IMG/VR virus record: IMGVR_UViG_3300044700_000691
Coordinates: 124,001-188,000 of that record
Direction: 5' to 3' (one strand)
DNA length: 64,000 bases
Part shown: positions 1 to 50,695 of the stretch, one piece after another
Numbering within the stretch: position 1 is the first letter of the stretch
Layout of the letters: each line of letters begins with the position of its first letter
The notes under the pieces: generated by a model
Told to the model about the DNA's origin: nothing
The model's input: the letters and a program-made list of their open reading frames with translations, nothing else
The model's database searches: none
Position numbers and translations under genes: made by a program

Positions 1-1
1 C

Positions 2-4772: not shown

Positions 4773-5735
4773 ATGGAACCGATTCTAACCGAGAATCCGC
4801 ACAGATTCGTCATCTTCCCTATTCAGCATCATGATCTGTGGGACTTTTATAAAAGGTCAGAGGCGTCTTTTTGGACAGCCGAAGAAATTGACTTAGCGGC
4901 GGACTTAACTGACTGGCGAACTAAACTTAACGACGACGAGCGTTATTTTGTTAAAAACATACTAGCTTTCTTTGCCGCATCAGATGGCATTGTAAACGAG
5001 AACTTAGCTGAAAATTTTGTTAGAGAGGTGCAATACCCAGAAGCTAAATTTTTCTATGGTTTTCAAATTATGATGGAGAATATCCATTCTGAAACATATT
5101 CCCTTCTTATTGATACTTATATTAGTGATGAAGAAGAAAAAGCCAACTTATTTAACGCGATTGATACAATTGATGCAGTTAAGAAAAAGGCAGAATGGGC
5201 ATTAAAATGGATTAAAAGTGATTCATTTGCTGAGAGACTAGTTGCATTTGCTGCAGTCGAAGGTATCTTTTTTTCTGGCTCTTTTTGTTCAATATTTTGG
5301 TTAAAGAAAAGAGGCCTTATGCCAGGACTAAGTTTTTCAAATGAACTTATTTCAAGAGATGAGGGTATGCATACAGATTTTGCAGTACACCTACATAATA
5401 ATCATATTGTAAATAAAGTTTCCGAAGAAAAAATCAAAGAGATTATTCTTTCTGCTTTGGAAATTGAAAAAGAATTCATTACAGAGTCTCTTCCAGTTAG
5501 ACTCATCGGTATGAATGCTGACTTAATGAAGCAATATCTGGAATTTGTTACAGATAGATTGCTACTTGACTTAGGTTGCAGTAAAGAGTTTAATGTTAAA
5601 AACCCATTTGACTTTATGACTAATATTGCACTTAAAGGAAAAACTAACTTCTTTGAAAAAAGAGTTGGGGAATACCAAAAGGCCGGCGTAAACTCTGCGA
5701 GTATTCAAGATTTTTCTACCGACGAGGATTTTTAA
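4773..5735 (+). CDS. nrdB: Ribonucleotide reductase class Ia beta subunit
   Basis: [17 protein letters not shown] and SRDEGMH di-iron motifs; C-terminal [12 protein letters not shown]. Confidence 0.97.
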
Positions 5736-5753
5736 AAAATAAGAGATAAGAAC

Positions 5754-8162
5754 ATGAAGGTTACCAAAAGAGATGGCTCGTTAGAGACCCTTAGACTAGA
5801 TAAGATTACCAACCGTATTAAAAAACAAACATATGGTTTAAATTCAGATTTCGTAGATGCGTTAGAGGTTGCTACTAAAGTAGTTTCTGGTATTTATGAT
5901 GGAATTACTACAGCTGAGCTTGATAATTTAGCAGCAGAAACCGCTGCTTCTTTAAATCATGCCCACCCAGATTATTCATACCTTGCTGCAAGAATTGCAA
6001 TTACGCGTTTACATAAAACCGTTAGTAAAAAGTTTTCAGATGTTATTGAATCTTTGTATTCATATATTGATCCTAAAACATTATTACCAGCTGGCTTAAT
6101 TAACGATGACGTAATTAAAGCTGTTCGTAAGCATGCTGATACCCTAAATGAATCTATCCTACACGATAGAGATTTTAATTTTGACTATTTTGGATTTAAG
6201 ACCCTTGAAAAGAGTTACCTATTAAAAATAAACGGTGAAACTGCAGAGGCTCCTCAACATATGTACATGAGAGTAGCAGTTGGTATTTGGGGAGAAGATA
6301 TTCAAAATGTGTTAAAGACATATGAATTATTGTCTACTCACAAAATGACACATGCAACTCCTACGTTATTCAACGCTGGAACAAGACGCCCTCAATTATC
6401 TTCATGCTTTCTATTAACTATGCAGGAAGATTCAATTCAAGGAATTTATAAAACCCTTTCTGATGTTGCAGCGATTTCACAAAATGCAGGTGGAATTGGG
6501 TTATCTATACATAATATTAGAGCAACAGGTTCCTATATTAAAGGAACAAATGGATCCTCTAATGGAATTGTTCCAATGCTTAAAGTATTTAACGAAACAG
6601 CTAGATATGTTGATCAAGGTGGCGGAAAGCGTAAAGGCTCATTTGCAATTTACCTTGAACCTTGGCATGCTGACGTCGAGGATTGGTTAGATCTTCGTAA
6701 AAACCACGGTAAAGAAGAACGCCGAGCTAGGGATCTTTTCTTAGCACTATGGACTCCTGATTTATTTATGGAAAGAGTTGAAGCCGATGCAGATTGGACT
6801 CTATTTTGTCCAGCTGAAATTGGTGTTGAACTTTGGGAAATGCACGGCCAAGAATTTAAAGAAAATTACGAAAGACTTGAAAGTGAAGGAAAGGGTCGTC
6901 GCACAATAAAAGCAAGAGCTCTTTGGCAAAAGGTATTAGAATCTCAAATTGAAACAGGCACGCCTTATATTCTTTATAAAGATGCAGCTAATGAGAAATC
7001 TAATCAAAAAAATCTAGGTACAATTAAGTCTTCAAACTTATGTACAGAGATTATGGAATACACAAGCAAGGACGAGCAAGCTGTTTGTAATCTTGCTTCA
7101 ATTGCAGTTAATCAATTTATCAAGTTTCCAGAGAAAAGATCGTTAAAGCAGCGTAGAGCTCATGCAGAATACGATCATCAAGCACTATACGATGTTACTT
7201 ATCAAACTACCCTAAATCTTAATAAGGTAATTGATATTAATTTCTATCCAACACCAGAGACCAAAGCCTCTAATATGAAACACCGTCCAATTGGAATCGG
7301 TATTCAGGGATTGGCCGATACATTTGCAATCTTAGGCTTACCTTTTACTTCAGATGAAGCTAAATCTCTAAATGAAGACATTTTTGAAACAATTTATTTT
7401 GCTTCAATGAAAGCTTCAGCCGATCTTGCTAAGAAACTTGGTGCATACGAATCGTTTGAAGGCAGTCCTTTAAGTCAAGGCCAATTTCAGTTTAATCTAT
7501 GGCAAGCCGACGAGTCCAAATTTTCTGGAAGATGGGATTGGTCTGCATTAAGAAAGCAGGTTATAAAAACTGGTGCACGCAATTCATTATTATTAGCACC
7601 AATGCCAACTGCGTCAACTGCTCAAATTATGGGTAATAACGAAGCGTTTGAGGCATTTACATCAAATTTGTATACTAGACGAACCCTATCTGGAGAATTT
7701 GTTATTGTTAACAAGCACCTAGTTAGAGACCTAGTTGAATTGGATCTATGGTCAGACAATATAAAGAATAGAATTATTACTGAAAAGGGCTCTGTTCAAA
7801 ATATTGCAGAAATTCCCGTTGAAATTAGAGAAATCTATAAAACAGTTTGGGAATTAAAACAGAAAGACATTATTGATATGTCAGCTGACCGTGGTAAATT
7901 TATATGTCAGTCACAGTCGCTTAACCTTTTTATTAAAGATGCAAATGCTGCTAAATTAACGTCTGCACATTTCCACTCTTGGAGAAAGGGTCTTAAAACT
8001 GGAATGTACTACCTAAGAACCGAATCTGCCGTTGATGCAATAGCGGGTCTTGGGGTTGATTCAGCTGCACTAAAAAAGTCTACCCTAACTGCTGAGCAAA
8101 TTCAAAGTGATTTAACTTGTTCGATTGACAATCCAGACGATTGTATTGCCTGTTCTTCTTAA
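5754..8162 (+). CDS. nrdA: Ribonucleotide reductase class Ia alpha subunit with N-terminal ATP-cone
   Basis: VTKRDG ATP-cone, TPTLFNAG, QLSSCF, SNLCTEI, LAPMPTAS, KTGMYYLR and C-terminal CIAC. Confidence 0.98.
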   Translation: MKVTKRDGSLETLRLDKITNRIKKQTYGLNSDFVDALEVATKVVSGIYDGITTAELDNLAAETAASLNHAHPDYSYLAARIAITRLHKTVSKKFSDVIESLYSYIDPKTLLPAGLINDDVIKAVRKHADTLNESILHDRDFNFDYFGFKTLEKSYLLKINGETAEAPQHMYMRVAVGIWGEDIQNVLKTYELLSTHKMTHATPTLFNAGTRRPQLSSCFLLTMQEDSIQGIYKTLSDVAAISQNAGGIGLSIHNIRATGSYIKGTNGSSNGIVPMLKVFNETARYVDQGGGKRKGSFAIYLEPWHADVEDWLDLRKNHGKEERRARDLFLALWTPDLFMERVEADADWTLFCPAEIGVELWEMHGQEFKENYERLESEGKGRRTIKARALWQKVLESQIETGTPYILYKDAANEKSNQKNLGTIKSSNLCTEIMEYTSKDEQAVCNLASIAVNQFIKFPEKRSLKQRRAHAEYDHQALYDVTYQTTLNLNKVIDINFYPTPETKASNMKHRPIGIGIQGLADTFAILGLPFTSDEAKSLNEDIFETIYFASMKASADLAKKLGAYESFEGSPLSQGQFQFNLWQADESKFSGRWDWSALRKQVIKTGARNSLLLAPMPTASTAQIMGNNEAFEAFTSNLYTRRTLSGEFVIVNKHLVRDLVELDLWSDNIKNRIITEKGSVQNIAEIPVEIREIYKTVWELKQKDIIDMSADRGKFICQSQSLNLFIKDANAAKLTSAHFHSWRKGLKTGMYYLRTESAVDAIAGLGVDSAALKKSTLTAEQIQSDLTCSIDNPDDCIACSS

Positions 8163-11804: not shown

Positions 11805-12115
11805 GCTCACCAATAATCCCAATTTACGATCGAGTGGTTATTAAACCAGACGAACAAAACAAAAAAACTGAAACTGGTATAATTCTGCCGCCTGATACTA
11901 GAAAACGCTCTAATAGTGGGGTAGTTATTGCAGTAGGCGGCGGAGCAGAAAGACCTATTCCATTAGAACCAGGAGATAAAGTAATCTATCAGCGTCATGC
12001 TGGATTGGATATGCAATGGAATGGCGAGACTTACTTAGTGGTTCTTGCACATGAAATTGTTGCAAAAATTGTAGCAGACTCTGCTCCAACCTTTCTTGAA
12101 CCTGGCGAAAGATAA
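11801..12115 (+). CDS. groES: Co-chaperonin GroES-like
   Basis: PIYDRVVIK, mobile loop TETGIILP, GVVIAVG, PGDKVIY and YLVV..EIVA. Confidence 0.9.
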   Translation: MSSPIIPIYDRVVIKPDEQNKKTETGIILPPDTRKRSNSGVVIAVGGGAERPIPLEPGDKVIYQRHAGLDMQWNGETYLVVLAHEIVAKIVADSAPTFLEPGER

Positions 12116-12180: not shown

Positions 12181-15100
12181 TTAGAACGAAGGAATAAATC
12201 CAGTTGCTTCTGAAGAAAGACCTCCACCAACTCTTGTAATTGTAATACGGTTGATGAATTTGTGAATACCTCTTGGGAAATCTAAGAATACATCGATAAT
12301 CGCTGAGTTTGCAGATAATACTTCTGGACCGTTATTGGTCGAGTCAAATACTACTGTATAACTTGCAACACCTTGTGCATTTTTAGCTCTATCTAAATAA
12401 CCTTCAACTAATGTTTTAATTCTTAAACGAGTAATTTCATCGTTAAAATCAAATAAGAAGTTGAATAGGATTCTTTCGATATCTTTTTCGATTGTTGCAA
12501 GAGCTTCTCTAACGTGAGTATTATTAAGAGCTGAATTAATTTTTTGATATGCAGTATTATTTGTAAATACCATGATACCAAATCCTCTACGACGAACGAT
12601 TAAGTTATAACCAACTGGCTCTAAGTAATCTCTATCTTCTTGAGATAATTCATATTCAACATTAACAATTTCAGGATCTCCTAAGATACCATTTTTACCA
12701 GCTACAATTGAGAAAGGTCTGCCTGCTTCGTACTTATTCATAAATGCATTTGCAACGTATGCTGCCGGCGGAACTGACTTGTTTCTACCATTATCATTTA
12801 CAATTAAGTTAGGCATAAAGTATGCTGCGTAAGATGCCATTGGAACTCCATTAACTTCTTCATCTACAAATTTAAATGTAGTAGTTGGATTAAGATCCAA
12901 ATTACCTCCATCTGCAATATGTTTAGCAGAAACTAATTTTGTAGTTAAATCAGAGAATGATGGTTCAACTGAAAGCTCTAATTGTCTGTAAGATGGAGCA
13001 TTTAAGATTGCTAAACACTGACCATTGTCTGCTGCAAGTTTTGCTAAATAATATTTAGATGAACCAGAGATATCACCTTCGTAAGTATCAATAATATATC
13101 TAAAATCTACAGCTTGACCTTCAGCCAATGTGCTTGCAATATTTGTGTTTTCATATAACCAACCTAAAATATCAGCTTGTCTAGTAGCAGTTCCATTAGG
13201 AAGTTGAGCATCTCTCATTACAAATCCGCTTAGCTTAACGCCTTTAGATGAAGTAATATAGTTTCTAATACCTTTATGGAAAATAATATCAGTATCAATG
13301 TCAACTCCAATTATAGTTGAATCGCTTGGTACTAATGTTGTAACTGTAAACTTTTTGTAAGTTTTTGTTGTAACAGTAGTAAACGCTGCAACTAAAGCTT
13401 TAGTAAAAGTATAAGTTCCACCGCTTCCTGCTGTTGTTGCCGCAGATAAAGTTAAGACATTTCCTACTTTATTAGTTACCGTAGTATTAGCTGCAATTCC
13501 TGTACCAGCTACTGTGCATCCAATTACAATATTTGCATTTGCTGCAGTTAAGGTAATTGTAGTTGCGCCTGTGATAAATGAGTTAACTGCAATTGCAGTT
13601 TCGTTAACAGCTGGGACAGCTGCTGTAACAACTGATGCCGAAGAAATTTCGTCTGCTCCAGCAACTGAAACAATTTTTAAGAATCTTGAACGTTTTGCTC
13701 CATTTGCTTTAGCTTTCACATAGTGATTAGGCTTAACAAATTCTGTAACGCTATCTAAATAAGCAGCATTACTTGCTGTTACAGCTGGAGAACCACTTCC
13801 TATTGTTACTGAGGTTGAGCTAAGAACTTTCATCTCAATTTTATTAAGAGCAGTCTTAGTTGTAGTAATTTCAAGACCATTATTGTTTGCAGTTAATTCA
13901 GTTGCAAAATCAAATACCTTTGTTGTTGTGCTAGTTCCATGAATATCTAGTGAAAGCTTAACAAATGTATCAACTACAGTAATTACTGGAATAGTTGCGC
14001 TTTGATTAGTTAAAGCAACGTTATCAAAACATTTAATTTTAATATAGCTTTTAGTAACTAAGTTAACAACTTCAGTAAATCCAGATTCAACTTTAAGATA
14101 TTTAGATGCAACCGTTCCGTTTTGCGTAGTAATAAAACCATTACCAGTTACAATAAATCCATCATACCATGCGTTGTAAAGTTGAGTACCTTCACGAGCA
14201 ATAATAATTTGATTACCGTTTTCTGTTACGACTCTACTAGAATCTGAAACTCCAGTTGTAACTTCAAATACTGCTGTGTTTTTAACTGGTGCTTTATAAC
14301 CAAGTACATCTAATTTAGCATTAGCGTCGGTGTAGTCTCCAATAAAACCATTATCAATAAAGTAATCTTGAAAATCTGCTGCAATAAGGTCTGTATAACC
14401 ATGACCAGCTAAATCGATTCGGTGTGAATCCATTGAAGCATTTGCAAAAACAGTGTCAAGGTCAATCAATTCAATTTTGTTTTCGTCTAGTGCACAAAAT
14501 AATTCGGTTTGAGAAAATAATCTGTTGAATACTCTGTCAATTGAAATATCTGAACCAGTTGCATCTTTAAATTGAGGAATAATTGAGCCGTTTACTCTTG
14601 CAATATTCTTAACTTCTCTTAAATTTAAGAAACCATTAAGTTTAGACATAATTAAACCTTTTTCGTTAAAGTATGTTTTATAAACAGGGTCAGTTGAAAG
14701 TCTCATATTATCTGACCAGTCGCCTTCTACTGCAATTAATTCAATAATATAGTCAGCAACGATATCATCTGGGTGAAGATAACTTGGAATAGTTACTTTG
14801 TCTCCGCCTGTAACCTTGTAGTATTCTTTAACAGTTACATCGTATCCGCTAACGTCTGCAAGCTTGGCCCAAACAGTAACTGGGCGTTTTCCTAAGTTAA
14901 CAATAGAAAAAATCTTATTGTCATCTTCTGAACTTAACGCGTTATTTTTAGTTCTGTTGAACTGGTCTTCGTCAGCATACCATAACTTCTGAGTATTAAA
15001 GAAGCTAGAAAGTGGTTGCTCGAATGCAGATGCATTAAAATCTGAATTAAATGATGCAGATTCAGTGTTGAATGTTGCAAATGTTACTTTGTCTAATGTA

Positions 15101-15393
15101 TCGTCAGTTGGCAATACGTTCAAAGCATAAACTGGGCCTTTTCTTAGAGCTACTTCTAAAGTTCTATGAAAATAACTACCCTTGCTTTCAAGTTTAGTGT
15201 CTCTTTCACCATAAACTGCTAGCGCGCTGTTTAAGTCGCTTAAAGCCACAACAGTATTGATTGGTCCTCTTTTACTCGATCCGATAACTAATCGGCCGGT
15301 TCCTAAAGGTAATGCAATGTTTTGACTCTCATCGATTTCAACTGTGTAAACACCACTTGATTTAAAGCGATTGAGATTTAATTTTTGTGCCAT
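12181..15393 (-). CDS. gp18: Tail sheath protein (gp18-like), enlarged to 1070 aa
   Basis: N-terminal SSGVYTVEIDES and GSSKRGPIN. C-terminal VPPAAYVA, NNTAYQKINSALNNTHVR..IEK, FDFNDEITR and VFDSTNN. Confidence 0.93.
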   Translation of the reverse strand: MAQKLNLNRFKSSGVYTVEIDESQNIALPLGTGRLVIGSSKRGPINTVVALSDLNSALAVYGERDTKLESKGSYFHRTLEVALRKGPVYALNVLPTDDTLDKVTFATFNTESASFNSDFNASAFEQPLSSFFNTQKLWYADEDQFNRTKNNALSSEDDNKIFSIVNLGKRPVTVWAKLADVSGYDVTVKEYYKVTGGDKVTIPSYLHPDDIVADYIIELIAVEGDWSDNMRLSTDPVYKTYFNEKGLIMSKLNGFLNLREVKNIARVNGSIIPQFKDATGSDISIDRVFNRLFSQTELFCALDENKIELIDLDTVFANASMDSHRIDLAGHGYTDLIAADFQDYFIDNGFIGDYTDANAKLDVLGYKAPVKNTAVFEVTTGVSDSSRVVTENGNQIIIAREGTQLYNAWYDGFIVTGNGFITTQNGTVASKYLKVESGFTEVVNLVTKSYIKIKCFDNVALTNQSATIPVITVVDTFVKLSLDIHGTSTTTKVFDFATELTANNNGLEITTTKTALNKIEMKVLSSTSVTIGSGSPAVTASNAAYLDSVTEFVKPNHYVKAKANGAKRSRFLKIVSVAGADEISSASVVTAAVPAVNETAIAVNSFITGATTITLTAANANIVIGCTVAGTGIAANTTVTNKVGNVLTLSAATTAGSGGTYTFTKALVAAFTTVTTKTYKKFTVTTLVPSDSTIIGVDIDTDIIFHKGIRNYITSSKGVKLSGFVMRDAQLPNGTATRQADILGWLYENTNIASTLAEGQAVDFRYIIDTYEGDISGSSKYYLAKLAADNGQCLAILNAPSYRQLELSVEPSFSDLTTKLVSAKHIADGGNLDLNPTTTFKFVDEEVNGVPMASYAAYFMPNLIVNDNGRNKSVPPAAYVANAFMNKYEAGRPFSIVAGKNGILGDPEIVNVEYELSQEDRDYLEPVGYNLIVRRRGFGIMVFTNNTAYQKINSALNNTHVREALATIEKDIERILFNFLFDFNDEITRLRIKTLVEGYLDRAKNAQGVASYTVVFDSTNNGPEVLSANSAIIDVFLDFPRGIHKFINRITITRVGGGLSSEATGFIPSF

Positions 15394-15539: not shown

Positions 15540-16028
15540 ATGAATTCAATGAAAAGAACCCCAAAACCTCTATCTAGAGGAGAATTAATTAGATTTATTA
15601 AGATTAGAGACGTTAAGTCGCCCGAATACGGAACTCCCGGTTCAGCTGGAATAGACTTTTTTGTTCCAAATGATTTTAAAGGCGCAATACTTGAACCAGG
15701 TGAAGCCATTTTAATTCCAAGCGGTATTCGTGCAAGGCTTCCTCTACATACAGCTCTAATTGCATTCAATAAAAGCGGGGTTGCTACAAAGAAGAGACTC
15801 CAAGTTGGTGCCCAAGTAGTAGATTGTGATTACCAAGGGGAAATCCATCTACATCACTATAATTGTGGAACAATCGATGCGTTAGTTTCTCCAGGAGATA
15901 AAATTGTACAGTTTATTCTTACCCCAATTATTAAAGCAAAATTAATTGAGTGTGAAAATGAGTCTGAGGTATTTCCAACACAATCTGATAGAGGTTCTGG
16001 CGGATTTGGTTCCACTGGAACAAATTAA
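15540..16028 (+). CDS. dut: Trimeric dUTPase (start probably ATG 15540 or 15549, not the track's TTG 15459)
   Basis: GSAGIDF, IPSGI, NKSG, VVDCDYQGEI, GDKIVQ and RGSGGFGSTG motifs. Confidence 0.93.
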   Translation: MNSMKRTPKPLSRGELIRFIKIRDVKSPEYGTPGSAGIDFFVPNDFKGAILEPGEAILIPSGIRARLPLHTALIAFNKSGVATKKRLQVGAQVVDCDYQGEIHLHHYNCGTIDALVSPGDKIVQFILTPIIKAKLIECENESEVFPTQSDRGSGGFGSTGTN

Positions 16029-16056: not shown

Positions 16057-17436
16057 ATGATAATAAGCTCTGAATTTAAACAAGAAGATTCTAAACTAGT
16101 AGTTTCATATTATGATGAAGCTGGTAATATTGCATATGCAGTAAAGCATATCCACGATGCTGATCAATTTAATTGGAAGCTGACGGGTCGCCCTTCGGAG
16201 TATCGAAATTGGGATAATAAATTTGTTGATAAAAGTAAAAGCAAATGGCTAAGTCGCTTCCGAATCGAAGAACTTATTCAAACCAGCTTTACTAAAGAAG
16301 AGCTTGATCAAATCTATTCTGAATATACTCCAAAGAAATATTTTCTCGATATTGAGATTCAGTTAACTTCAAACGAGTTCCCCGATCCAGCCAAAGCTGC
16401 CATGCCAGTAAACTTAATTTCATTTTGTGGTCCAGATAATGTAACCTATATTTTATCCACAATGAAAAAGCTAGATAACGAAGCTATTTCTAAAATGGAA
16501 GCAGAGATTAATGAATACCTAAGTGCACAAGGCCAGGTATTTACACTTAAATATATGTTTTTTGAGAAAGAAGAAGACTTAATGTCAACCTTCTTCCATC
16601 GAATACTTCCAAAGCTTCCATTTATTACAGGTTGGAATGTAATTGAATTTGACTGGAAATATCTAATTAATCGATGCAAGCGCCTTAATATTAAACCAAT
16701 GGAATCTATGGTTTGTGATAGGCTAATCGGTAAAGGTCAAGCGCCAGTTCATTTAGGTCTACTCGATTATCTTGAAGTATTTATGAACCTTAAACCAATT
16801 AAAGTTGTTGAAAATTACAAGCTTGATTACATTTCTCAATTAGTGCTTGGAGTAAGTAAATTACATCACGAATATGGTTCAATGATGGAAGCTCAACAAG
16901 ATGTTGAAAACTTCGTAAAGTATAACGCAATTGACGTAATGCTTGTTAAATTAATTGAAGATAAGCTAAGTCTACTTGATGTAGCCTTCGCTATTTCCAA
17001 AACTGCACAAGTTGATGTATCGAAAGTCTTTAGTGCAGTGTTTATTACAGAATCCCTAATGTGTCGCCACTTTTTACGAGATGGTAAGAAAATGGCATCA
17101 GACAAAAGAGATTTAGCCGAACAGGTAACATACGAAGGTGCCTATGTAAGTAAGCCTATTCCAGGTCACCATAAATATGTTTCATGCTTTGACTTTTCGT
17201 CAATGTACCCTAACGTTCAAATCCAGTTTAATATTTCTCCTGATACATACTTAGGTAAAATGAAACCTGGTCATATTCTTAAAGAGGATGAAATTTATAC
17301 AAAAAATGGTACCCTTTTTACTAAGAAGAAAGACTCAGCTGCTCGAGTTATACTAAAATCAATGTACGATCGACGTATGGGTATTAAAGGGCATATCACT
17401 GAATTAAAACAAGCAGCGAAAAAAGCCGCACACTAA
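16057..17436 (+). CDS. gp43A: Family B DNA polymerase, N-terminal half (exonuclease + motif A), ending in the fingers
   Basis: ExoI FLDIEI, ExoII GWNVIEFDWKYL, ExoIII YNAIDV, then YEGAYV and motif A FDFSSMYP. Stops after ILKSMYDRR, lacking motifs B and C. Confidence 0.92.
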   Translation: MIISSEFKQEDSKLVVSYYDEAGNIAYAVKHIHDADQFNWKLTGRPSEYRNWDNKFVDKSKSKWLSRFRIEELIQTSFTKEELDQIYSEYTPKKYFLDIEIQLTSNEFPDPAKAAMPVNLISFCGPDNVTYILSTMKKLDNEAISKMEAEINEYLSAQGQVFTLKYMFFEKEEDLMSTFFHRILPKLPFITGWNVIEFDWKYLINRCKRLNIKPMESMVCDRLIGKGQAPVHLGLLDYLEVFMNLKPIKVVENYKLDYISQLVLGVSKLHHEYGSMMEAQQDVENFVKYNAIDVMLVKLIEDKLSLLDVAFAISKTAQVDVSKVFSAVFITESLMCRHFLRDGKKMASDKRDLAEQVTYEGAYVSKPIPGHHKYVSCFDFSSMYPNVQIQFNISPDTYLGKMKPGHILKEDEIYTKNGTLFTKKKDSAARVILKSMYDRRMGIKGHITELKQAAKKAAH

Positions 17437-21462: not shown

Positions 21463-22119
21463 ATGTGGAAGAAAAAAGTTAAAGAGGAAGAACTATTTAC
21501 AAACGAAGGCGACAATTGGTCAGCCTTAGATGGAGAAGATAGTGAAGTCTCTAGTCACGACGATTCTGAAGAAATTGATTTAGCTGAAGACTCTGAAATT
21601 GATGATGGCGATGAAGCAAGGTATCAACAACACTTAAAATTAAAGAGAGAAGATAAAATCTTCAATAACTCTTGGAATAGTGGAGATGGAGGTAGCGATG
21701 AGATTTATCAAAACAATGGAATTAGGTTAGATCCAAGTCATACTGATAGTCATCTACTGGATGCAGCATCATTTGATCGATATACTGATAAGATGATTAT
21801 CGAACGAGACCTAAATAATATTGCACTAGCAGATGAAGTTATGATTGGCTTAATGGAAATATCGTCACAGGGTCGCAAATTTACTAAACCTGAATTAAAT
21901 CTAGCGTTTGCTAGACTATGCGAACTGGTTAGAACTAATAGAAAAACAACATTCATTGGACCAATCGATGTATTAGATTTCGTGTCAATGATTTCTCAAC
22001 TAGATTTTAAACGACTGTTTGAATCAATGGAATACGAACATAAAGAGGTTCTTTTATTAGAACTTAATAATAAATTTGGAATACTAGACGGTAAGGTTCG
22101 ATTTAAAAAGTTATTTTAA
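21463..22119 (+). CDS. Hypothetical protein with very acidic N-terminal region
   Basis: 218-aa ORF with an Asp/Glu-rich first ~55 aa; its stop overlaps the gp47 start. Confidence 0.75.
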   Translation: MWKKKVKEEELFTNEGDNWSALDGEDSEVSSHDDSEEIDLAEDSEIDDGDEARYQQHLKLKREDKIFNNSWNSGDGGSDEIYQNNGIRLDPSHTDSHLLDAASFDRYTDKMIIERDLNNIALADEVMIGLMEISSQGRKFTKPELNLAFARLCELVRTNRKTTFIGPIDVLDFVSMISQLDFKRLFESMEYEHKEVLLLELNNKFGILDGKVRFKKLF

Positions 22120-23243
22120 TGAAGTTAAACAATATAGACAAAATCTTTTTAGTAGGTGATCTCCATCTTGGAATTAGAAACAATTCTGTAGAGTGGGCAG
22201 ATATTCAAAAAGAATTTTTATTAGAAGTTTTACCAAAAACGGCAGCTGACAATGGATTTAATCCAGAAACAGATATTCTTATTTTAGAGGGCGATATTTT
22301 TCATTCTAGAGAATCTATTAATGTTAGAATTCAAAATGATTCAATGGAAATTTTTGAAAATCTGGCTAAAGTATTTAAAAGAGGTGTCTTTATTATATTA
22401 GGTAATCATGATGTCTATTACAAAGATTCAAATCAAGTTAACTCAGTTCGCCACCTAAAACACCTTGCTGAAAATATCCATGTATTTGAGAGCCCAGAGA
22501 TTTTAACAATTAACGAAACTGAGAATTGGCTAATGCTACCTTGGGTTGAAGATACTAAAACTCTAGGAGGCCATGTTGCAGACTATGCAGGTATGTGTAA
22601 TCGTATTGTATGTCATGCAGATATTAAGGGTCTTAAATTTAATAGATGGACCAAAGTTGAACATGGATTAGAAATTACCGCCCTATCCCAGTATAACAGG
22701 GTTTACTCTGGCCACATCCATCACAGACAAGAACAAGATAATATATTGTATACCGGAACGCCCTACCAGATGGACCGTGGTGATCGAGGGAACGCTAAGG
22801 GGTATTACATAATAGATGCTAAAAACAATTATACAGAAACCTTTATTGAAAACCTAACATCGCCAAATTATGTCAAATACGATATATGCGAGTTATTAGA
22901 TATGAATATTGATCAGCTAAAAGGATTATTAACCAATAATTTTGTTGATGTTATGATTGAGATTAATTTATCCAATAAAATTCCGCTTAGTCAGTTCTTA
23001 GCTGTATTAGAGCAGATAAAATATAGAAAAATTGAATTTTTTACCTATACAAGTAGTGATTCATCCGAAGCTAAGCCGGCTGATATTTTGTTAGACCTAT
23101 CAAGTTCAGATAAGTTTGATGCGTTTGAAATTTTTAAAACCTACTTAAATTCAAAACAATACACTCCAGTTATGAAAAAGGATCTTATTACAAAATTCTT
23201 TGAAATACAGGAAAGAGCAAAACAAGATAAAGACTATGTTTAA
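22119..23243 (+). CDS. gp47: Recombination nuclease, Mre11/SbcD-like (gp47)
   Basis: GDLHLG, GDIFH, GNHD, CH and SGHIH metallophosphoesterase motifs; YTGTPYQ. Confidence 0.93.
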   Translation: MKLNNIDKIFLVGDLHLGIRNNSVEWADIQKEFLLEVLPKTAADNGFNPETDILILEGDIFHSRESINVRIQNDSMEIFENLAKVFKRGVFIILGNHDVYYKDSNQVNSVRHLKHLAENIHVFESPEILTINETENWLMLPWVEDTKTLGGHVADYAGMCNRIVCHADIKGLKFNRWTKVEHGLEITALSQYNRVYSGHIHHRQEQDNILYTGTPYQMDRGDRGNAKGYYIIDAKNNYTETFIENLTSPNYVKYDICELLDMNIDQLKGLLTNNFVDVMIEINLSNKIPLSQFLAVLEQIKYRKIEFFTYTSSDSSEAKPADILLDLSSSDKFDAFEIFKTYLNSKQYTPVMKKDLITKFFEIQERAKQDKDYV

Positions 23244-23745
23244 TATTGGAATTACAAATAAAGTTAAAATACAGCTTGACCCGGTCGAAGGTTTTCCTAA
23301 GATTATAGCTACCAATAGAATTTTACAAGGTGAACCTATTGAAACAGTTTGTGCACACGATTTAAATATGATTCAGGCAAAACTTGTATTTAGTTTAGCA
23401 CCAGCATTTTCAAATACAATTCAGACCAATCCAATCAAATTAAAGCAATTAAATTCTGAGATGGATAAGTTAGTTAATGATTTAAGAAATGAATTACTTG
23501 AGTCAAACTCCGATGCTACGCCAGAAGATCTTAAAAATATTCAAGATGATCCACGATTGGTTGATAAATTACATGCATATCACTGGCTGGACTTTTTAAC
23601 AGGTAATATTTCAAGCTATACTGTATCAGACTATCCAAACGCTAGTATTGAATGGAATGATCAAATTAAAACTTGGCAAGTTATTGCTTCTACTGAAATT
23701 TTGACAGATCAGGTAATAAGCTTGCCTAAACCAAAAGACTTATGA
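23236..23745 (+). CDS. SET-domain-like protein, apparently degenerate (start ATG 23236)
   Basis: KIIATNRILQGEPIE resembles the SET N-motif. YTVSDYPNASIEW..WQVIASTEILTDQVISL resembles NHSxxPN..A.RDI..GEEI, but NH is replaced. Confidence 0.55.
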   Translation: MFNIGITNKVKIQLDPVEGFPKIIATNRILQGEPIETVCAHDLNMIQAKLVFSLAPAFSNTIQTNPIKLKQLNSEMDKLVNDLRNELLESNSDATPEDLKNIQDDPRLVDKLHAYHWLDFLTGNISSYTVSDYPNASIEWNDQIKTWQVIASTEILTDQVISLPKPKDL

Positions 23746-25406
23746 AAATAAAGGAATTTGCATTTAAAAATATTTGCTCGTATGGAAATAAGATACAAAC
23801 TTTTAAATTTTCAGATGAGCCAAATTTAATTCTTGTTCAAGGAACAAACGGGTCTGGTAAATCCAGTATATCGGATGCCTTGACTGTTTCTATATATGGA
23901 AAATCTGGTATTAGAAAAATCAAAGAGATTCCAAATAGAATCAATAAAAATGCCTATACTTTAGTAAAGTTTACCGCAAACAATGGTGATGAAGTTGAAA
24001 TAGAAAGAGGACTTGAACCAAATTTCTCTAAAATTCTAATTAACGGAAATGACTATAATTTACCTGATAAAAGAAGAGTTGATGAATTTATTGAAGAAGA
24101 ACTTGTTAAAATTCCATTTAATGTTTTTTCAAATACGATTTCTCTTTCAGTAAATGACTTTAAGAGTTTTGTTAAATTGAGCCCAGCTGATAAACGAAAA
24201 ATTATTGATAAGATCTTTGGATTAGATCTAGTTAATGATATGAATCAATTGGTTAAAGAAGACGCAAAAACAGTAAAGGGCAAGCAATTCGCTAGTCAAA
24301 CTGCTCTTACTAAAAATCAACATCTATTAGAGCAAGCAGTGCAACAATTATTAGCTCTGCAACAAGACTTAACTCAAGAAAAGGAAAGCAGAATTATTCA
24401 ACTAAACGATATTTTAACTAGAGCCAAGTCTAAACAAGACGAAGTTAAGCTATCATATGCTGATCTTAAAACCGAATTGGACGCTACTAAGAATAAGTTA
24501 AAGGCTGCCAGAGAATCTAAATCTTCGTGCACATTTAATATTGCTGAGATCGATAAAAAATTAGCAATATATGCAAAAAACAAGTGTCCACACTGCTTAA
24601 GCGATTTAACTGATACTGTTCATATTGGAATTAAGCAGCAACTGGAAGATAATAAAGCCAATTTTCAAGAAGAACTTTTGCCAATAGCAACTAAGATTTC
24701 AGAAATAGAAACTGGAGCTAGGGATCTTGAAGCATCTCAAGAAAAATTTAGAAACGACCATGCAAAACTTTCGTCAGCAATCGATTCTGCAAAAATAGAA
24801 TTGGATTCGCTAACGCAATCGCAAGACTCAGAAAAACAAACTCAATATCTACAAAAGATTATTGATCAGTTAAACGAAGATATTGAATCGACTAACACCG
24901 ATCTAGGCGAATTAGATAAGGAACTTTCAGTTAATCAAGAGCTTGAAGTAATTCTTTCAGATAACGGAATGAAACGTATCCTAATGAATCAAATTATTCC
25001 TCTACTTAATAAGAATATTCTAAGAACTTCTAAAATGCTTGAGTTTAAGTTTGCATTTGAATTTGATTTGGAATTTAATCCTATTATTACACACCTTGGA
25101 ATGCAAATTTCGCCAGAGTCACTATCAGCCGGCGAACAAAAGAAAATGAATCTAATTGTACTATTGTGTATATTAGAATTAATTAAAATGAAAAATAATA
25201 AAATTAATCTACTTTTTCTAGATGAAATATTTTCTTCTCTAGATTCTGTAAGTATTTACAAAGTAGTTGATTTGTTAAAAACTTTTGCTAAGAAGCACAA
25301 TATGACAGTGTTTGTAATCTCGCATGATCCATTACCGGAAGAGTTTTTTGATATTAAGGTGTTTGTCGAAAACAAAGACCATTTTTCTGATATAAGAGTA
25401 AATTAA
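23742..25406 (+). CDS. gp46: Recombination ATPase, Rad50/SbcC-like (gp46)
   Basis: Walker A GTNGSGKS, coiled coil with zinc hook CPHC, signature LSAGE and Walker B LFLDE. Confidence 0.95.
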   Translation: MKIKEFAFKNICSYGNKIQTFKFSDEPNLILVQGTNGSGKSSISDALTVSIYGKSGIRKIKEIPNRINKNAYTLVKFTANNGDEVEIERGLEPNFSKILINGNDYNLPDKRRVDEFIEEELVKIPFNVFSNTISLSVNDFKSFVKLSPADKRKIIDKIFGLDLVNDMNQLVKEDAKTVKGKQFASQTALTKNQHLLEQAVQQLLALQQDLTQEKESRIIQLNDILTRAKSKQDEVKLSYADLKTELDATKNKLKAARESKSSCTFNIAEIDKKLAIYAKNKCPHCLSDLTDTVHIGIKQQLEDNKANFQEELLPIATKISEIETGARDLEASQEKFRNDHAKLSSAIDSAKIELDSLTQSQDSEKQTQYLQKIIDQLNEDIESTNTDLGELDKELSVNQELEVILSDNGMKRILMNQIIPLLNKNILRTSKMLEFKFAFEFDLEFNPIITHLGMQISPESLSAGEQKKMNLIVLLCILELIKMKNNKINLLFLDEIFSSLDSVSIYKVVDLLKTFAKKHNMTVFVISHDPLPEEFFDIKVFVENKDHFSDIRVN

Positions 25407-25415
25407 TATAGACCT

Positions 25416-26294
25416 ATGCATACTTACAAAGGAACATCATTCGCAGAAGCTTACCAAAAATCACTAATTGATTTATTTGATAATGGCGACTTGTGTGAAA
25501 CCCGAGGAACTACCAGTAAAGAATTACTAAATGTTTCATTAGAAATTACTGATCCAAGTCAGTGTATGTATACTAATATGACCAGGTCAACCCAGACCAA
25601 ATATATTGCAGCTGAATTATTATGGTATTATGCCGGACGTAATGACGTTGCGTTTATTTCAAAGTATGCTAAATTTTGGGAACAGATACAAAATCCAAAT
25701 GGAACTGTAAACTCAGCATACGGTAACTTAATATTTAAGCCAAAGTCGCTAGGCGGTCTTACTCAATATGAATGGGCAGTTGCTTCCTTAGCAAAAGATA
25801 AGGACAGTCGACAGGCGATACTTCACTTTAATACGCCAGAACATCAATATAACGGAAATAAAGATTTTGTTTGTACAATGTATGGAATTTTTCATATTAG
25901 ACATAATAAACTAAATTTCAGTGTCTATATGAGATCCAATGATGCAATTTGGGGTACTCCAACTGATGTTGCATTTTTCTGTTCTCTTCAAATGCAAGCC
26001 CTAGCACATCTAAAAGAATTTTATCCAGAATTGGAACTTGGTACATACACTCACCATGCAAATTCATATCACATATATGATAGACACTATGAGTTAGTTA
26101 GTAAAATGCTGCTTGGCGAGTTTATCCCAACTAGACTACCATCAGTTAAAACTAATCTAGTATCAATGTCTGGCCATCCAACTCAAGATTTTACAGATAT
26201 TTTTGAATTTGTTGAACAGGACCAAGATGATATTTTAATTCTACAAGAAAAAGACGATCTTTTAACCTGGATTGTAAACCAATTTGAAGTATGA
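25416..26294 (+). CDS. Thymidylate-synthase-fold enzyme, probably dCMP (hydroxy)methylase-like
   Basis: AELLWY, NSAYG, DSRQA, catalytic DFVCT (C153), MRSNDAIWGTPTD (D184) and SYHIY. The Asp at the E. coli ThyA N177 position matches T4 gp42. Confidence 0.8.
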   Translation: MHTYKGTSFAEAYQKSLIDLFDNGDLCETRGTTSKELLNVSLEITDPSQCMYTNMTRSTQTKYIAAELLWYYAGRNDVAFISKYAKFWEQIQNPNGTVNSAYGNLIFKPKSLGGLTQYEWAVASLAKDKDSRQAILHFNTPEHQYNGNKDFVCTMYGIFHIRHNKLNFSVYMRSNDAIWGTPTDVAFFCSLQMQALAHLKEFYPELELGTYTHHANSYHIYDRHYELVSKMLLGEFIPTRLPSVKTNLVSMSGHPTQDFTDIFEFVEQDQDDILILQEKDDLLTWIVNQFEV

Positions 26295-26737
26295 TAACTA
26301 GATATGATATAGTATACATGAAAATGGCGTCACAATGGGGCCAGTTATCCAATGCTCGTCGTAAAAAGGTTGGAGCTCTATTGGTAAAAAACAATACTAT
26401 TATTGCAGATGGTTATAATGGAACCCCTTCTGGATTTGAAAACGAGTGCGAAACTCCAATCTTTGATAAAGATAATAACTTTTTAGACTATGAAACTAAG
26501 TGGTACGTTTTGCATGCTGAATCAAATGCATTAGCTAAAGTTGCAAAATCCACACAATCTTCTGAGGGATCTACTCTTTATGTTACAATGTCTCCGTGTA
26601 GAGAATGTAGCAAATTAATTCTACAAGCTGGAATTAACCGAGTAGTTTATTCAGAAACATACAGAGACTCTGCCGGTCTCGACTTATTAAAAAAGGCAGG
26701 GGTTGATGTAGTTCAGATTCTAACCGAGTCTGAATAA
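26291..26737 (+). CDS. dCMP deaminase
   Basis: KVGALLV, GYNGTPSG, HAESNA and SPCRECSK zinc motifs. Confidence 0.93.
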   Translation: MITRYDIVYMKMASQWGQLSNARRKKVGALLVKNNTIIADGYNGTPSGFENECETPIFDKDNNFLDYETKWYVLHAESNALAKVAKSTQSSEGSTLYVTMSPCRECSKLILQAGINRVVYSETYRDSAGLDLLKKAGVDVVQILTESE

Positions 26738-26754
26738 AAAAAGTTATCCACATT

Positions 26755-27156
26755 TTGACAGAAGATATTGCAACCAGAGAATTAACTATTGTTTTCGTAA
26801 GAGATTATAAAACATTCGTTGAGCGCTTTTCTAAAAAAAGTAAAAGCGACTATGTTCTTAATATTAATAAGATCGTAAAGGAAAAATTTCAAACTGAAAT
26901 CTTTATTCCAAATAAAGTCCAAGCGTTTCTATTAAATTATGAAATTTCTAAATTGATTGATAAAGTTATTAAGATAAAGAACCAGAAATATTCCAGGCTA
27001 ATTTATCTAAATACTGAGCTTTCGCCAACTGGCATCTTGAATTCAATTAATTTCTTAAAGACCACATATACTTGGGTCGAGTTTGATTTTACCGTAATTG
27101 ATCCAGACCAAGAATTTCAAGCCGTTCTAAAAGACATAAAAAAAGGAGATCATTGA
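26755..27156 (+). CDS. Hypothetical protein
   Basis: 133-aa ORF with a TTG start; last gene of the + strand block. Confidence 0.6.
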   Translation: MTEDIATRELTIVFVRDYKTFVERFSKKSKSDYVLNINKIVKEKFQTEIFIPNKVQAFLLNYEISKLIDKVIKIKNQKYSRLIYLNTELSPTGILNSINFLKTTYTWVEFDFTVIDPDQEFQAVLKDIKKGDH

Positions 27157-27165
27157 TCTCCTTTT
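27141..27165. terminator. Bidirectional intrinsic terminator
   Basis: Perfect 11-bp stem AAAAGGAGATC-ATT-GATCTCCTTTT at a convergent junction. Confidence 0.85.
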
Positions 27166-27185
27166 CTATTTAAGTAAATTTAATA

Positions 27186-50095: not shown

Positions 50096-50695
50096 TTATT
50101 TATCCCGAACTAATCTTTGGATTAACTCGCAAAACTCATCAACTGAGTCTTGACTAAAATTATTTGTAAAATGGTCAAAGGAATTACCTTCACGAGCATC
50201 TTTAAATCTAAATGGCGCATCTTCAATCAATTTTAGCATAAGTCGCTTTTCTTCTTTTGCTGAAACTAATCCATCCCATAGGTCTTTTTTGCGAGCCTGA
50301 TCCTGTTTAAATTCATCTGGTGCATCAATCATAATAGTTTTGCAGTTTTGGTAGCCCGGTCTTTTAATTAAGCCATATAGCTCAGATTGAGCTTGACTAA
50401 ATTCCAAGCGATTCCAAATGGTTGCCCAAGTAGCTGCGGTAATATGAGCTCTATCAAATACAAAAATCTTATCGGGAAAATGCTCATGTAGATCAAGTAT
50501 TGTCATAATATTACCCATACTAAAATAGTGAATACCAGAATCAGATTTATCCCATTCTTTAACTATTGCTGAATATTCATCAGCTAGGTAAAATTTATAA
50601 TAAAATAGATTTAATTCATCACCGTGTAGCTTAACCAGTTGATTAAGTAAATGGGTTTTGCCTGAGTGACGGGTACCTTCAATAAAAATTATCAT
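50096..50695 (-). CDS. P-loop nucleoside monophosphate kinase (thymidylate-kinase-like)
   Basis: IIFIEGTRHSGKT Walker A and VFDRAH (the TMPK DR motif). Confidence 0.75.
   Translation of the reverse strand: MIIFIEGTRHSGKTHLLNQLVKLHGDELNLFYYKFYLADEYSAIVKEWDKSDSGIHYFSMGNIMTILDLHEHFPDKIFVFDRAHITAATWATIWNRLEFSQAQSELYGLIKRPGYQNCKTIMIDAPDEFKQDQARKKDLWDGLVSAKEEKRLMLKLIEDAPFRFKDAREGNSFDHFTNNFSQDSVDEFCELIQRLVRDK
50097..50104 (-). promoter_or_regulatory. Late promoter-like GATAAATA
   Basis: 22 nt upstream of ATG 50074. Confidence 0.6.

What the first reader, a model, noticed from the sequence alone, without database searches (positions are those of the whole stretch)
25416..26737. 'Thymidylate synthase' has the dCMP-specific signature, predicting modified-cytosine DNA
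Seen: catalytic C153 in DFVCT (not PCH) and D184 in RSNDAIWGTPTD, 31 residues apart. Established: E. coli ThyA has C146/N177, T4 dCMP hydroxymethylase has C148/D179, and this Asn/Asp position sets dUMP versus dCMP preference. It is coupled to a dCMP deaminase. A dUTPase and an unassigned NMP kinase are also in the window, as T4 has cd, gp56 and gp1. Inference: the phage makes a 5-substituted dCMP (methyl, hydroxymethyl or other) as anti-restriction protection.
Basis: partly seen in the sequence, partly recalled or inferred. Interest (0 to 1): 0.75.

Follow-up and report, generated by a model that had tools for sequence, protein, structure and literature searches.

The report
Phage dCMP hydroxymethylase beside dCMP deaminase
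A large freshwater T4-like phage carries, besides an ordinary thymidylate synthase, a second divergent copy whose active site matches phage T4's dCMP hydroxymethylase, so its DNA very probably carries 5-hydroxymethylcytosine: a sound prediction, but of a well-known kind.

Summary
ORF 25416-26294 (292 aa) is a thymidylate-synthase-fold protein with C153 in DFVCT and D184 in GTPTD. Its stop overlaps (ATGA) the start of a dCMP deaminase at 26291-26737.

At eight active-site positions, four of them published as diagnostic, the protein is identical to T4 gp42. These include L143->D (hydroxymethyl rather than methyl product), D169 kept (not a 5-hydroxy-dCMP synthase) and N177->D (dCMP rather than dUMP). 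Ser174 and Arg132 mark a deoxyribo substrate. All 120 close homologues, and 136 of the 150 nearest cluster representatives, share the signature.

The same genome also encodes a canonical ThyA (PCH, Asn177) outside the window. Near-complete relatives carry both genes too, which is the T4 td + 42 + cd arrangement.

The "unassigned NMP kinase" (50096-50695, minus strand) folds as a thymidylate kinase. The dUTPase is an ordinary trimeric dUTPase and is not related to gp56. I found no gp56/MazG-type dCTPase, glycosyltransferase or carbamoyltransferase in the available 84% of the genome.

The pairing of an N177D synthase homologue with a nearby dCMP deaminase is already published as a marker of cytosine-modified phage DNA. 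This is a new member of a known kind; only chemistry on virion DNA can prove it.

The parts
25416..26294 (+). Divergent thymidylate-synthase homologue, predicted dCMP hydroxymethylase (5hmdCMP synthase), 292 aa. Key residues: E67, R132, D150, C153, T154, R173-S174-N175-D176, D184, H219, Y221.
26291..26737 (+). dCMP deaminase, 148 aa, translationally coupled to the upstream gene (ATGA overlap). Zn-site motifs HAE and PCREC are present.
   Evidence: adjacency conserved in the related IMG/VR loci that extend that far.
26755..27156 (+). Conserved 133-aa protein of unknown function that follows the deaminase in the related loci that extend that far. Its predicted fold weakly resembles P-loop kinases, but it has no Walker A motif. 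Whether it belongs to the pathway is unproven.
   Evidence: (no family).
27139..27167 (-). Terminator-like hairpin (13 pairs followed by a T run) where the plus-strand replication/nucleotide operon meets the minus-strand structural genes.
15540..16028 (+). Trimeric dUTPase (162 aa as called) with all five dUTPase motifs, including the C-terminal RGSGGFGSTG. It supplies dUMP and is not a gp56 homologue.
50096..50695 (-). P-loop protein (GTRHSGKT) with a thymidylate-kinase fold. It is the candidate dNMP kinase that would phosphorylate 5hmdCMP (and dTMP).
4773..8162 (+). Class I ribonucleotide reductase, small (4773-5735) and large (5754-8162) subunits, which supply dNDPs.
22119..25406 (+). gp47-like (22119-23243) and gp46-like (23742-25406) recombination nuclease subunits directly upstream. 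They form part of the conserved order uvsX-41-47-46-hydroxymethylase-deaminase.

Best explanation
The ORF at 25416-26294 is a dCMP hydroxymethylase of the T4 gp42 type. Cys153 attacks C6 of dCMP and methylene-tetrahydrofolate donates the one-carbon unit. Because the pocket carries Asp150 in place of the water-excluding Leu143 of ThyA, and lacks ThyA's closing C-terminal tail, the exocyclic methylene intermediate is hydrated to give 5-hydroxymethyl-dCMP instead of being reduced to a methyl group.

The thymidylate-kinase-fold protein at 50096-50695, together with a host NDP kinase, would raise the product to 5hmdCTP, which the phage polymerase incorporates. The translationally coupled dCMP deaminase draws on the same dCMP pool to make dUMP. 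With the dUTPase, it feeds the phage's separate canonical ThyA. The two adjacent genes therefore sit at the dCMP branch point that sets the hmC:T ratio for a 36% G+C genome, as cd, 42 and td do in T4.

Shown here: the fold, the residue signature, the second ThyA, conserved synteny and the kinase fold. Inferred: the product, its incorporation into DNA, its extent and its anti-restriction role.
For: Residue signature: at the eight compared active-site positions the protein reads D/C/T/R/S/N/D/D, identical to T4 gp42. It differs from XP12 5mdCMP synthase (N/C/P/../D/D), from SP8, ViI and phiW-14 5hmdUMP synthases (D/C/N/../D/N), from RB69 5hodCMP synthase (E/C/T/../N/D) and from ThyA (L/C/H/../D/N). 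The meaning of L143, D169 and N177 is taken from PMC13326640, and that of H147 and N177 from PMC8670742.

Substrate sugar: S174 and R132 match the deoxyribose-preferring Ser/Arg pair, not the Ala/Lys pair of MilA (PMC5175136; alignment).

Other catalytic residues: E67, H219 and Y221 align with T4 Glu60, His216 and Tyr218 and are invariant in the family.

Second synthase: a canonical ThyA with PCH and GLPFNIASY lies at genome 194088-195371 (278 bits). Three 93-100% complete relatives also carry both genes. No ThyX was found.

Phylogeny: the family falls inside a strongly supported clade of non-methylating homologues, apart from ThyA and XP12.

Conservation: the signature is invariant in 120/120 homologues and present in 136/150 nearest representatives. 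The gene order 46-hydroxymethylase-deaminase holds in the 80 IMG/VR loci wherever they extend that far.

Cultured relatives: homologues with the same signature lie next to beta-glucosyltransferase (Lactobacillus ATCCB, Enterococcus vipetofem) or carbamoyltransferase plus dCMP deaminase (Xp15). VPE25/VFW DNA resists bisulfite conversion and restriction.

Published association: a dCMP deaminase within 3 kb of a synthase homologue occurs in 70% of modified versus 6% of unmodified contigs.

Kinase: the AF2 model (pLDDT 79.6) matches thymidylate kinases over its full length.

Expression: the locus is present in three freshwater metatranscriptome libraries.
Against: There is no chemical evidence; the DNA comes from metagenomes only.

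L143D/E is a published correlate of hydroxymethyl products, not a proven determinant, and only one 5mdCMP synthase (XP12) was available to me as a contrast.

I found no gp56/MazG/PRA-PH-type dCTPase, so dCTP may not be excluded and replacement of C could be partial.

I found no homologue of T4 gp1, Alc or DenA. I also found no glycosyltransferase or carbamoyltransferase in the 84% of the genome available (plus the Pfam tables).

The tree does not resolve which characterised enzyme is the sister group. Identity to T4 gp42 is only 28.6% over 210 residues.
Confidence: 0.75

Rival explanations
1. The enzyme is a dCMP methyltransferase (5-methyl-dCMP synthase, as in XP12). The coupled deaminase would then convert 5mdCMP to dTMP, as shown for some metagenomic synthase-deaminase pairs.
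For: Same N177D substitution. In-cis deaminases that prefer 5mC or 5hmC have been demonstrated, and five of seven cognate synthase homologues made 5mdCMP.
Against: XP12 differs at the L143 and H147 positions (N and P, versus D and T here) and branches outside the clade that holds the query. The phage has its own canonical ThyA plus a dUTPase, so it does not need a 5mdCMP route to dTMP.
Confidence: 0.07
2. 5hmdCMP is made but is mostly deaminated by the neighbouring enzyme to 5hmdUMP. The modified base in DNA would then be 5hmdU or a thymidine hypermodification.
For: Tight translational coupling, and adjacency conserved across the related loci that reach that far. Some phage dCMP deaminases deaminate 5hmdC nucleotides. 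The next conserved gene has a weak kinase-like fold.
Against: The seven deaminases shown to act on 5hmdC were all linked to predicted 5mdCMP synthases, not hydroxymethylases. Known 5hmdU phages make 5hmdUMP directly with an Asn177 enzyme. The phage keeps a canonical ThyA. The 133-aa protein lacks a Walker A motif.
Confidence: 0.07
3. The enzyme is a flavin-dependent 5-hydroxy-dCMP synthase, as in RB69 gp48 and DLP3 gp80.
For: It shares N177D, an acidic residue at the L143 position and Thr at the H147 position with RB69 gp48. Both lie in the same broad clade.
Against: The published diagnostic D169N change is absent. Asp176 is invariant in all 120 homologues. No arabinosyl or other glycosyltransferase cluster was found.
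Confidence: 0.03
4. The enzyme is a second, divergent thymidylate synthase or a dUMP hydroxymethylase acting on dUMP supplied by the coupled deaminase.
For: Databases annotate it as thymidylate synthase. A deaminase-to-synthase order would make metabolic sense.
Against: It has Asp rather than Asn at position 177, and it lacks the PCH motif and His147. It scores far below the ThyA equivalog cut-offs. A genuine ThyA is present. All tested dUMP hydroxymethylases keep Asn177.
Confidence: 0.04
5. The enzyme is a CMP (ribonucleotide) hydroxymethylase like MilA or BcmA, serving a nucleoside product or RNA rather than DNA.
For: MilA is the top-scoring solved structure. Both proteins have a C-terminal extension beyond the synthase core.
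Against: It has Ser174 and Arg132 where ribose-preferring enzymes have Ala and Lys. It is embedded in a T4-like DNA replication and dNTP module that is conserved across the related loci.
Confidence: 0.02

Closest known systems
Phage T4 gp42 dCMP hydroxymethylase (PDB 1B5E), with T4 cd and td
   Same: Thymidylate-synthase fold and an identical eight-residue active-site signature (D/C/T/R/S/N/D/D). The equivalents of Glu60, His216 and Tyr218 are kept. It lacks the closing C-terminal tail of ThyA. It coexists with a canonical ThyA and a dCMP deaminase in a T4-like genome of about 35% G+C.
   Different: Only 28.6% identity over 210 residues. It carries a roughly 60-residue C-terminal extension that T4 lacks. 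Here the gene is fused in an operon with the deaminase and sits after gene 46. No homologue of gp56, gp1, alpha/beta-glucosyltransferase, Alc or DenA was detected.
Synthase-homologue plus dCMP-deaminase pairs from MetaGPA metaviromes (Yang et al. 2021, eLife; Yang et al. 2024, bioRxiv)
   Same: An N177D homologue within 3 kb of a PF00383/PF14437 deaminase, the published genomic marker of cytosine-modified phage DNA.
   Different: The published examples often also carry PRA-PH (dCTPase-like) and carbamoyltransferase genes, which are absent here. The deaminases shown to prefer 5mC were paired with 5mdCMP synthases, not hydroxymethylase-type enzymes.
Enterococcus phages VPE25/VFW/vipetofem and Lactobacillus phage ATCCB synthase homologues
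   Same: 37-39% identity and the same DCTDD signature. VPE25/VFW cytosines are experimentally modified.
   Different: Those genes lie beside a beta-glucosyltransferase (and, in ATCCB, a UDP-galactopyranose mutase). They belong to siphoviruses of Gram-positive hosts and have no adjacent deaminase.
Xanthomonas phage Xp15 cluster (carbamoyltransferase - synthase homologue - dCMP deaminase)
   Same: 37% identity, the same signature except Ser at the C168 position, and a deaminase immediately downstream.
   Different: It has a carbamoyltransferase, consistent with the published 5-carbamoyloxymethylcytosine pathway. None was found here.
MilA CMP 5-hydroxymethylase (PDB 5JNH)
   Same: The best-scoring solved relative. 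It has Asp at both the 143 and 177 positions and a C-terminal extension.
   Different: MilA has Ala176/Lys133, which favour ribose; the phage enzyme has Ser/Arg. MilA belongs to an antibiotic biosynthesis pathway.
RB69 gp48 5-hydroxy-dCMP synthase and XP12 5-methyl-dCMP synthase
   Same: Cytosine-specific thymidylate-synthase homologues with N177D.
   Different: RB69 carries D169N (Asp is kept here). XP12 has Asn and Pro at the 143 and 147 positions and branches outside the query's clade.

Membership tests
Thymidylate synthase superfamily (Pfam PF00303 fold) | Significant match to the family profile with a catalytic Cys nucleophile | tested here: met
   87.7 bits against a cut-off of 24.3. C153 aligns with C146 of E. 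coli ThyA and C148 of T4 gp42.
Canonical ThyA (dUMP to dTMP) | Asn177, His147, the Leu143-Pro-Pro-Cys motif and a score above the ThyA equivalog cut-offs | tested here: not met
   The protein has D184, T154 and D150-F-V-C. NCBIfam ThyA models give 44-67 bits against cut-offs of 108-405. The genome's other copy meets these criteria.
dCMP hydroxymethylase (T4 gp42 type, 5hmdCMP synthase) | Asp at the position of E. coli Asn177 (cytosine specificity) | tested here: met
   D184, invariant in 120/120 homologues.
dCMP hydroxymethylase (T4 gp42 type, 5hmdCMP synthase) | Acidic residue at the position of Leu143 (admits water, giving a hydroxymethyl product) | tested here: met
   D150 lies three residues before the Cys, as D145 does in T4. 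The criterion is from PMC13326640.
dCMP hydroxymethylase (T4 gp42 type, 5hmdCMP synthase) | Asp169 retained (not Asn) | tested here: met
   D176 in RSND, identical to T4 RSND.
dCMP hydroxymethylase (T4 gp42 type, 5hmdCMP synthase) | Deoxyribose-type pocket: Ser167 and Arg126' equivalents, plus the His/Tyr pair that binds the 3'-OH | tested here: met
   S174, R132, H219 and Y221.
dCMP hydroxymethylase (T4 gp42 type, 5hmdCMP synthase) | Enzyme converts dCMP plus CH2-THF to 5hmdCMP plus THF | not testable with these tools
   Needs an enzyme assay or co-expression followed by LC-MS.
5-hydroxy-dCMP synthase (RB69 gp48 type) | D169N substitution | tested here: not met
   Asp176 is present and invariant.
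dUMP hydroxymethylase (SPO1/SP8, ViI, phiW-14 type) | Asn177 retained, with an acidic residue at 143 | tested here: not met
   The query has Asp at 177. SP8, ViI and phiW-14 all have Asn.
T4-style complete hmC replacement system | dCTPase (gp56 or a MazG/PRA-PH analogue) that removes dCTP | tested here: not met
   No BLAST hit to gp56 beyond a 22-residue chance-level match. No MazG was found, and only a 13-bit sub-threshold PRA-PH match inside a 964-aa protein that lacks the metal-binding motif. About 16% of the genome was unavailable.
T4-style complete hmC replacement system | Phage dNMP kinase able to phosphorylate 5hmdCMP | tested here: inconclusive
   There is no gp1 homologue. A thymidylate-kinase-fold P-loop protein and a guanylate-kinase-like protein are present, but their substrate range is unknown.
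T4-style complete hmC replacement system | DNA glycosyltransferase acting on 5hmC | tested here: not met
   No match to T4 alpha- or beta-glucosyltransferase, PF09198, GT2 or GT1 in this genome. Near-complete relatives do carry GT2 and GT1 domains of unknown target.

The most novel reading that the evidence does not exclude
A large clade of freshwater/aquatic T4-like jumbo phages (about 400 IMG/VR contigs) substitutes cytosine with 5hmC without any recognisable dCTPase or DNA glycosyltransferase. The clade would then either carry bare or partial 5hmC, or process it by a so-far unknown route. That route might involve the conserved 133-aa kinase-fold protein lacking a P-loop that follows the hydroxymethylase-deaminase pair.
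Probability: 0.2. Interest if true: 0.55.

Novelty: new member of a known kind. Interest (0 to 1): 0.32.

Why it matters
If virion DNA confirms it, a widespread group of uncultured freshwater T4-like jumbo phages would join the T-even phages as users of 5-hydroxymethylcytosine. That bears on how these genomes are sequenced and restricted, on host defence (type IV restriction, CRISPR) in lakes, and on the supply of new hydroxymethylases, deaminases and kinases as tools for DNA-modification chemistry.

It would not change current understanding. The residue code and the synthase-deaminase linkage are already published. The useful result here is a well-supported functional re-annotation of a gene that every source labels "thymidylate synthase".

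Tried and rejected
- **Nucleotide search against phage records:** no match.
- **BLASTP of T4 proteins against all 244 ORFs:** gp1, gp56, alpha-gt, beta-gt, Alc, DenA, Frd and Dam gave nothing. Only gp42 and cd hit.
- **Weak gp56 hit to a 149-aa ORF (genome 66756-67205):** Pfam shows only coiled-coil noise, so I rejected it.
- **13-bit PRA-PH match inside the 964-aa RNA-ligase-domain protein (46664-49558):** no EExxE-type motif, so I rejected it as a dCTPase.
- **ThyX, MazG, T4 beta-gt and carbamoyltransferase profiles:** no match in the genome.
- **Placing the relatives' glycosyltransferase genes by synteny:** failed. The flanks have no homologues here, and one GT1-domain protein lies among tail-fibre genes.
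- **Looking 10 kb beyond the record's end in a longer JGI contig:** no relevant gene.
- **Complex prediction of hydroxymethylase with deaminase:** no answer (score 0.00), which is no evidence either way.
- **Maximum-likelihood tree:** did not resolve the sister group.
- **Palindrome avoidance:** no strong depletion of C-containing sites (GATC 1.01, CCGG 0.96, GCGC 0.99). This fits protected DNA but is not diagnostic.
- **Public runs:** held only as assembled contigs, so no read-level modification signal could be sought.
- **Wasted look-up:** one search added nothing.
Full report
**Setting.** The window is bases 124001-188000 of a 216,815-bp IMG/VR virus record, 36% G+C, estimated 84% complete. 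The phage is T4-like. The window holds gp23 capsid protein, the gp21-type prohead protease, gp20 portal, gp13, gp32, an RNase H-like 5'-3' exonuclease, UvsX, a gp41-type helicase, gp47/gp46, UvsW, class I ribonucleotide reductase, GroES and a family B DNA polymerase split into two distant genes. Identical or near-identical copies occur in many freshwater metagenomes and in metatranscriptomes. Offsets between this record and a 231,953-bp JGI contig of the same phage fit a circularly permuted genome of about 259 kb. That agrees with the 84% completeness estimate (arithmetic).

**Observation.** ORF 25416-26294 encodes 292 residues with C153 in DFVCT and D184 in GTPTD. It matches Pfam Thymidylat_synt (87.7 bits) but falls far below every NCBIfam ThyA equivalog cut-off. 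Its best solved relatives are MilA CMP hydroxymethylase and T4 dCMP hydroxymethylase, ahead of all true thymidylate synthases. C153 and D184 align with T4 C148 and D179. The ORF's stop overlaps the start codon of a 148-aa dCMP deaminase (ATGA). The deaminase's nearest solved relative is the cyanophage S-TIM5 enzyme, and its zinc motifs are intact.

**What the enzyme makes.** Recent literature gives a residue code for this superfamily, in E. coli ThyA numbering:
- N177D selects dCMP over dUMP.
- An acidic residue in place of Leu143 correlates with hydroxymethyl rather than methyl products.
- D169N marks the flavin-dependent 5-hydroxy-dCMP synthases of RB69 and DLP3 (PMC13326640).
- His147 and Asn177 are the two positions that differ between modified and unmodified metavirome contigs (PMC8670742).

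I aligned the query with enzymes of known product, fetched from their genome records: T4 gp42, RB69 gp48 and td, XP12, SP8, ViI and phiW-14.

| Enzyme (product) | Signature at L143 / C146 / H147 / R166 / S167 / C168 / D169 / N177 |
|---|---|
| Query | D / C / T / R / S / N / D / D |
| T4 gp42 (5hmdCMP) | D / C / T / R / S / N / D / D |
| XP12 (5mdCMP) | N / C / P / R / S / S / D / D |
| SP8, ViI, phiW-14 (5hmdUMP) | D / C / N / R / S / N, Q or G / D / N |
| RB69 gp48 (5hodCMP) | E / C / T / R / S / Q / N / D |
| ThyA | Leu143 (LPPCH), His147, Asn177 |

The query is identical to T4 gp42 at all eight positions. MilA's ribose preference depends on Ala176 and Lys133, where deoxyribose-specific enzymes have Ser and Arg (PMC5175136). 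The query has Ser174 and Arg132. E67, H219 and Y221 correspond to T4 Glu60, His216 and Tyr218. The sequence therefore predicts dCMP as substrate and 5-hydroxymethyl-dCMP as product.

A quick maximum-likelihood tree puts the family inside a strongly supported clade of all non-methylating homologues, apart from ThyA and XP12. It does not resolve the sister group.

**It is not the phage's thymidylate synthase.** A whole-genome profile search found a second, high-scoring homologue at genome 194088-195371, outside the window. It has LPPCH, QRSVD and GLPFNIASY, so it is a canonical ThyA. No ThyX is present. Three 93-100% complete relatives, about 60% identical in the hydroxymethylase, each carry both a canonical ThyA (211-289 bits) and the divergent copy (71-78 bits). 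This is the T4 arrangement of td plus gene 42 plus cd.

**Family and context.**
- The protein has 904 homologues at E<1e-5 in the word-indexed search.
- It has 335 cluster representatives at E<1e-30 in the exhaustive search.
- It has 399 relatives in IMG/VR.
- The signature is invariant in the 120 listed homologues and present in 136 of the 150 nearest representatives.
- In the 80 fetched loci the order uvsX-41-47-46-hydroxymethylase-deaminase-(133-aa protein) is kept wherever the locus extends that far, down to 59% identity.
- The closest cultured-phage homologues (35-39% identity, same signature) lie next to a beta-glucosyltransferase (Lactobacillus ATCCB, Enterococcus vipetofem) or next to a carbamoyltransferase and a dCMP deaminase (Xanthomonas Xp15).
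- The vipetofem relatives VPE25 and VFW have bisulfite-resistant, restriction-resistant cytosines (PMC4999554).
- The linkage of a dCMP deaminase to an N177D homologue has been published as a marker of cytosine-modified phage DNA: 70% of modified contigs against 6% of unmodified ones (bioRxiv 10.1101/2024.12.05.627091).

**Companion enzymes.**
It is unrelated to T4 gp56.
- The "unassigned NMP kinase" is the P-loop protein at 50096-50695 on the minus strand. It has no significant family hit: nothing in PHROGs, and only sub-threshold generic AAA matches in Pfam. Language-model look-alikes carry Thymidylate_kin and dNK domains. Its AlphaFold model (pLDDT 79.6) matches thymidylate kinases over the full length, with TM up to 0.71.
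- Elsewhere the genome has a guanylate-kinase-like protein, a NUDIX hydrolase, thioredoxin and a non-specific endonuclease.
- I found no gp56/MazG/PRA-PH dCTPase, no DHFR, no Alc or DenA, and no glycosyltransferase or carbamoyltransferase (and the Pfam tables).
- Pfam coverage excludes roughly 74-120 kb, which holds large structural genes, and the missing 40 kb or so.
- Relatives have GT2 and GT1 domains whose targets are unknown.

**Mechanism proposed.** dCMP comes from breakdown of host DNA and from nucleotide turnover. It is partitioned by the two coupled enzymes. The hydroxymethylase makes 5hmdCMP, which the thymidylate-kinase-fold kinase and a host NDP kinase raise to the triphosphate. 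The deaminase makes dUMP for the phage ThyA. Without a dCTPase, replacement of C may be incomplete. Without a transferase, the base may stay as bare 5hmC. Both points are open.

The seven deaminases shown to act on 5hmdC were all paired with predicted 5mdCMP synthases, so I regard a conventional dCMP-to-dUMP role as more likely here. The alternative, in which this deaminase acts on 5hmdCMP, is kept as a rival.

**Verdict.** This is a new member of a known kind, of moderate to low interest. No experiment exists for this phage, and the decisive tests are nucleoside LC-MS and enzyme assays.

Noticed in passing
window 16057-17436 (+) and 55705-57135 (+): The family B DNA polymerase is encoded as two separate genes about 38 kb apart: an exonuclease plus N-terminal polymerase part (459 aa) and a C-terminal polymerase part (476 aa). 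A TnsA-like endonuclease-domain protein lies at 58255-58767, just downstream of the second part.
   Followed up: no
window 26755-27156 (+): A conserved, basic 133-aa protein follows the deaminase in the related loci that extend that far. It has no family hit. Its AF2 model (pLDDT 80) weakly resembles P-loop kinases such as T4 polynucleotide kinase, but the Walker A motif is absent (FVRDYKTF).
   Followed up: partly
outside the window: genome 194088-195371 (-) and 195343-195708 (-); locus L001 1207-2490 and 2462-2827: The canonical ThyA is unusually long (427 aa), with internal insertions relative to the Pfam model. It overlaps a small HAD-family phosphatase gene (DxDGT motif; possibly a nucleotidase). 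An Endonuclease_NS gene lies nearby.
   Followed up: partly
window 46664-49558 (-): A 964-aa protein with an N-terminal RNA-ligase domain (residues 25-235) and about 730 residues of unknown function. It lies in the same gene run as the thymidylate-kinase-fold gene, one gene away.
   Followed up: partly
window 11801-12115 (+); outside the window: genome 121702-123294 (+): The phage encodes both GroES (Cpn10) and GroEL (Cpn60) homologues. Elsewhere the genome has ribosomal protein S21, two sigma-70-like factors, a ClpB-like AAA protein, PhoH, an IMPDH/GMP-reductase-like protein, UvdE and Fpg repair enzymes.
   Followed up: no
whole record versus JGI contig Ga0451734_0000001: Coordinate offsets between the two assemblies differ by 259,028 bp. 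This implies a circularly permuted genome of about 259 kb, of which this record holds 84%. The next 10 kb beyond its end encode Hc1, ClpP and a cREC_REC domain protein.
   Followed up: partly
window 23742-27156: The locus is present at 99-100% identity in two freshwater metatranscriptome libraries, with a 95-99% variant in a third. This is consistent with expression in lakes, but DNA carry-over is not excluded.
   Followed up: partly
window 1-3370 (+), running off the window start: A 1342-aa ORF with no Pfam hit spans the start of the window. A 1070-aa ORF with no hit lies at 12181-15393 (-), between the GroES and dUTPase genes.
   Followed up: no
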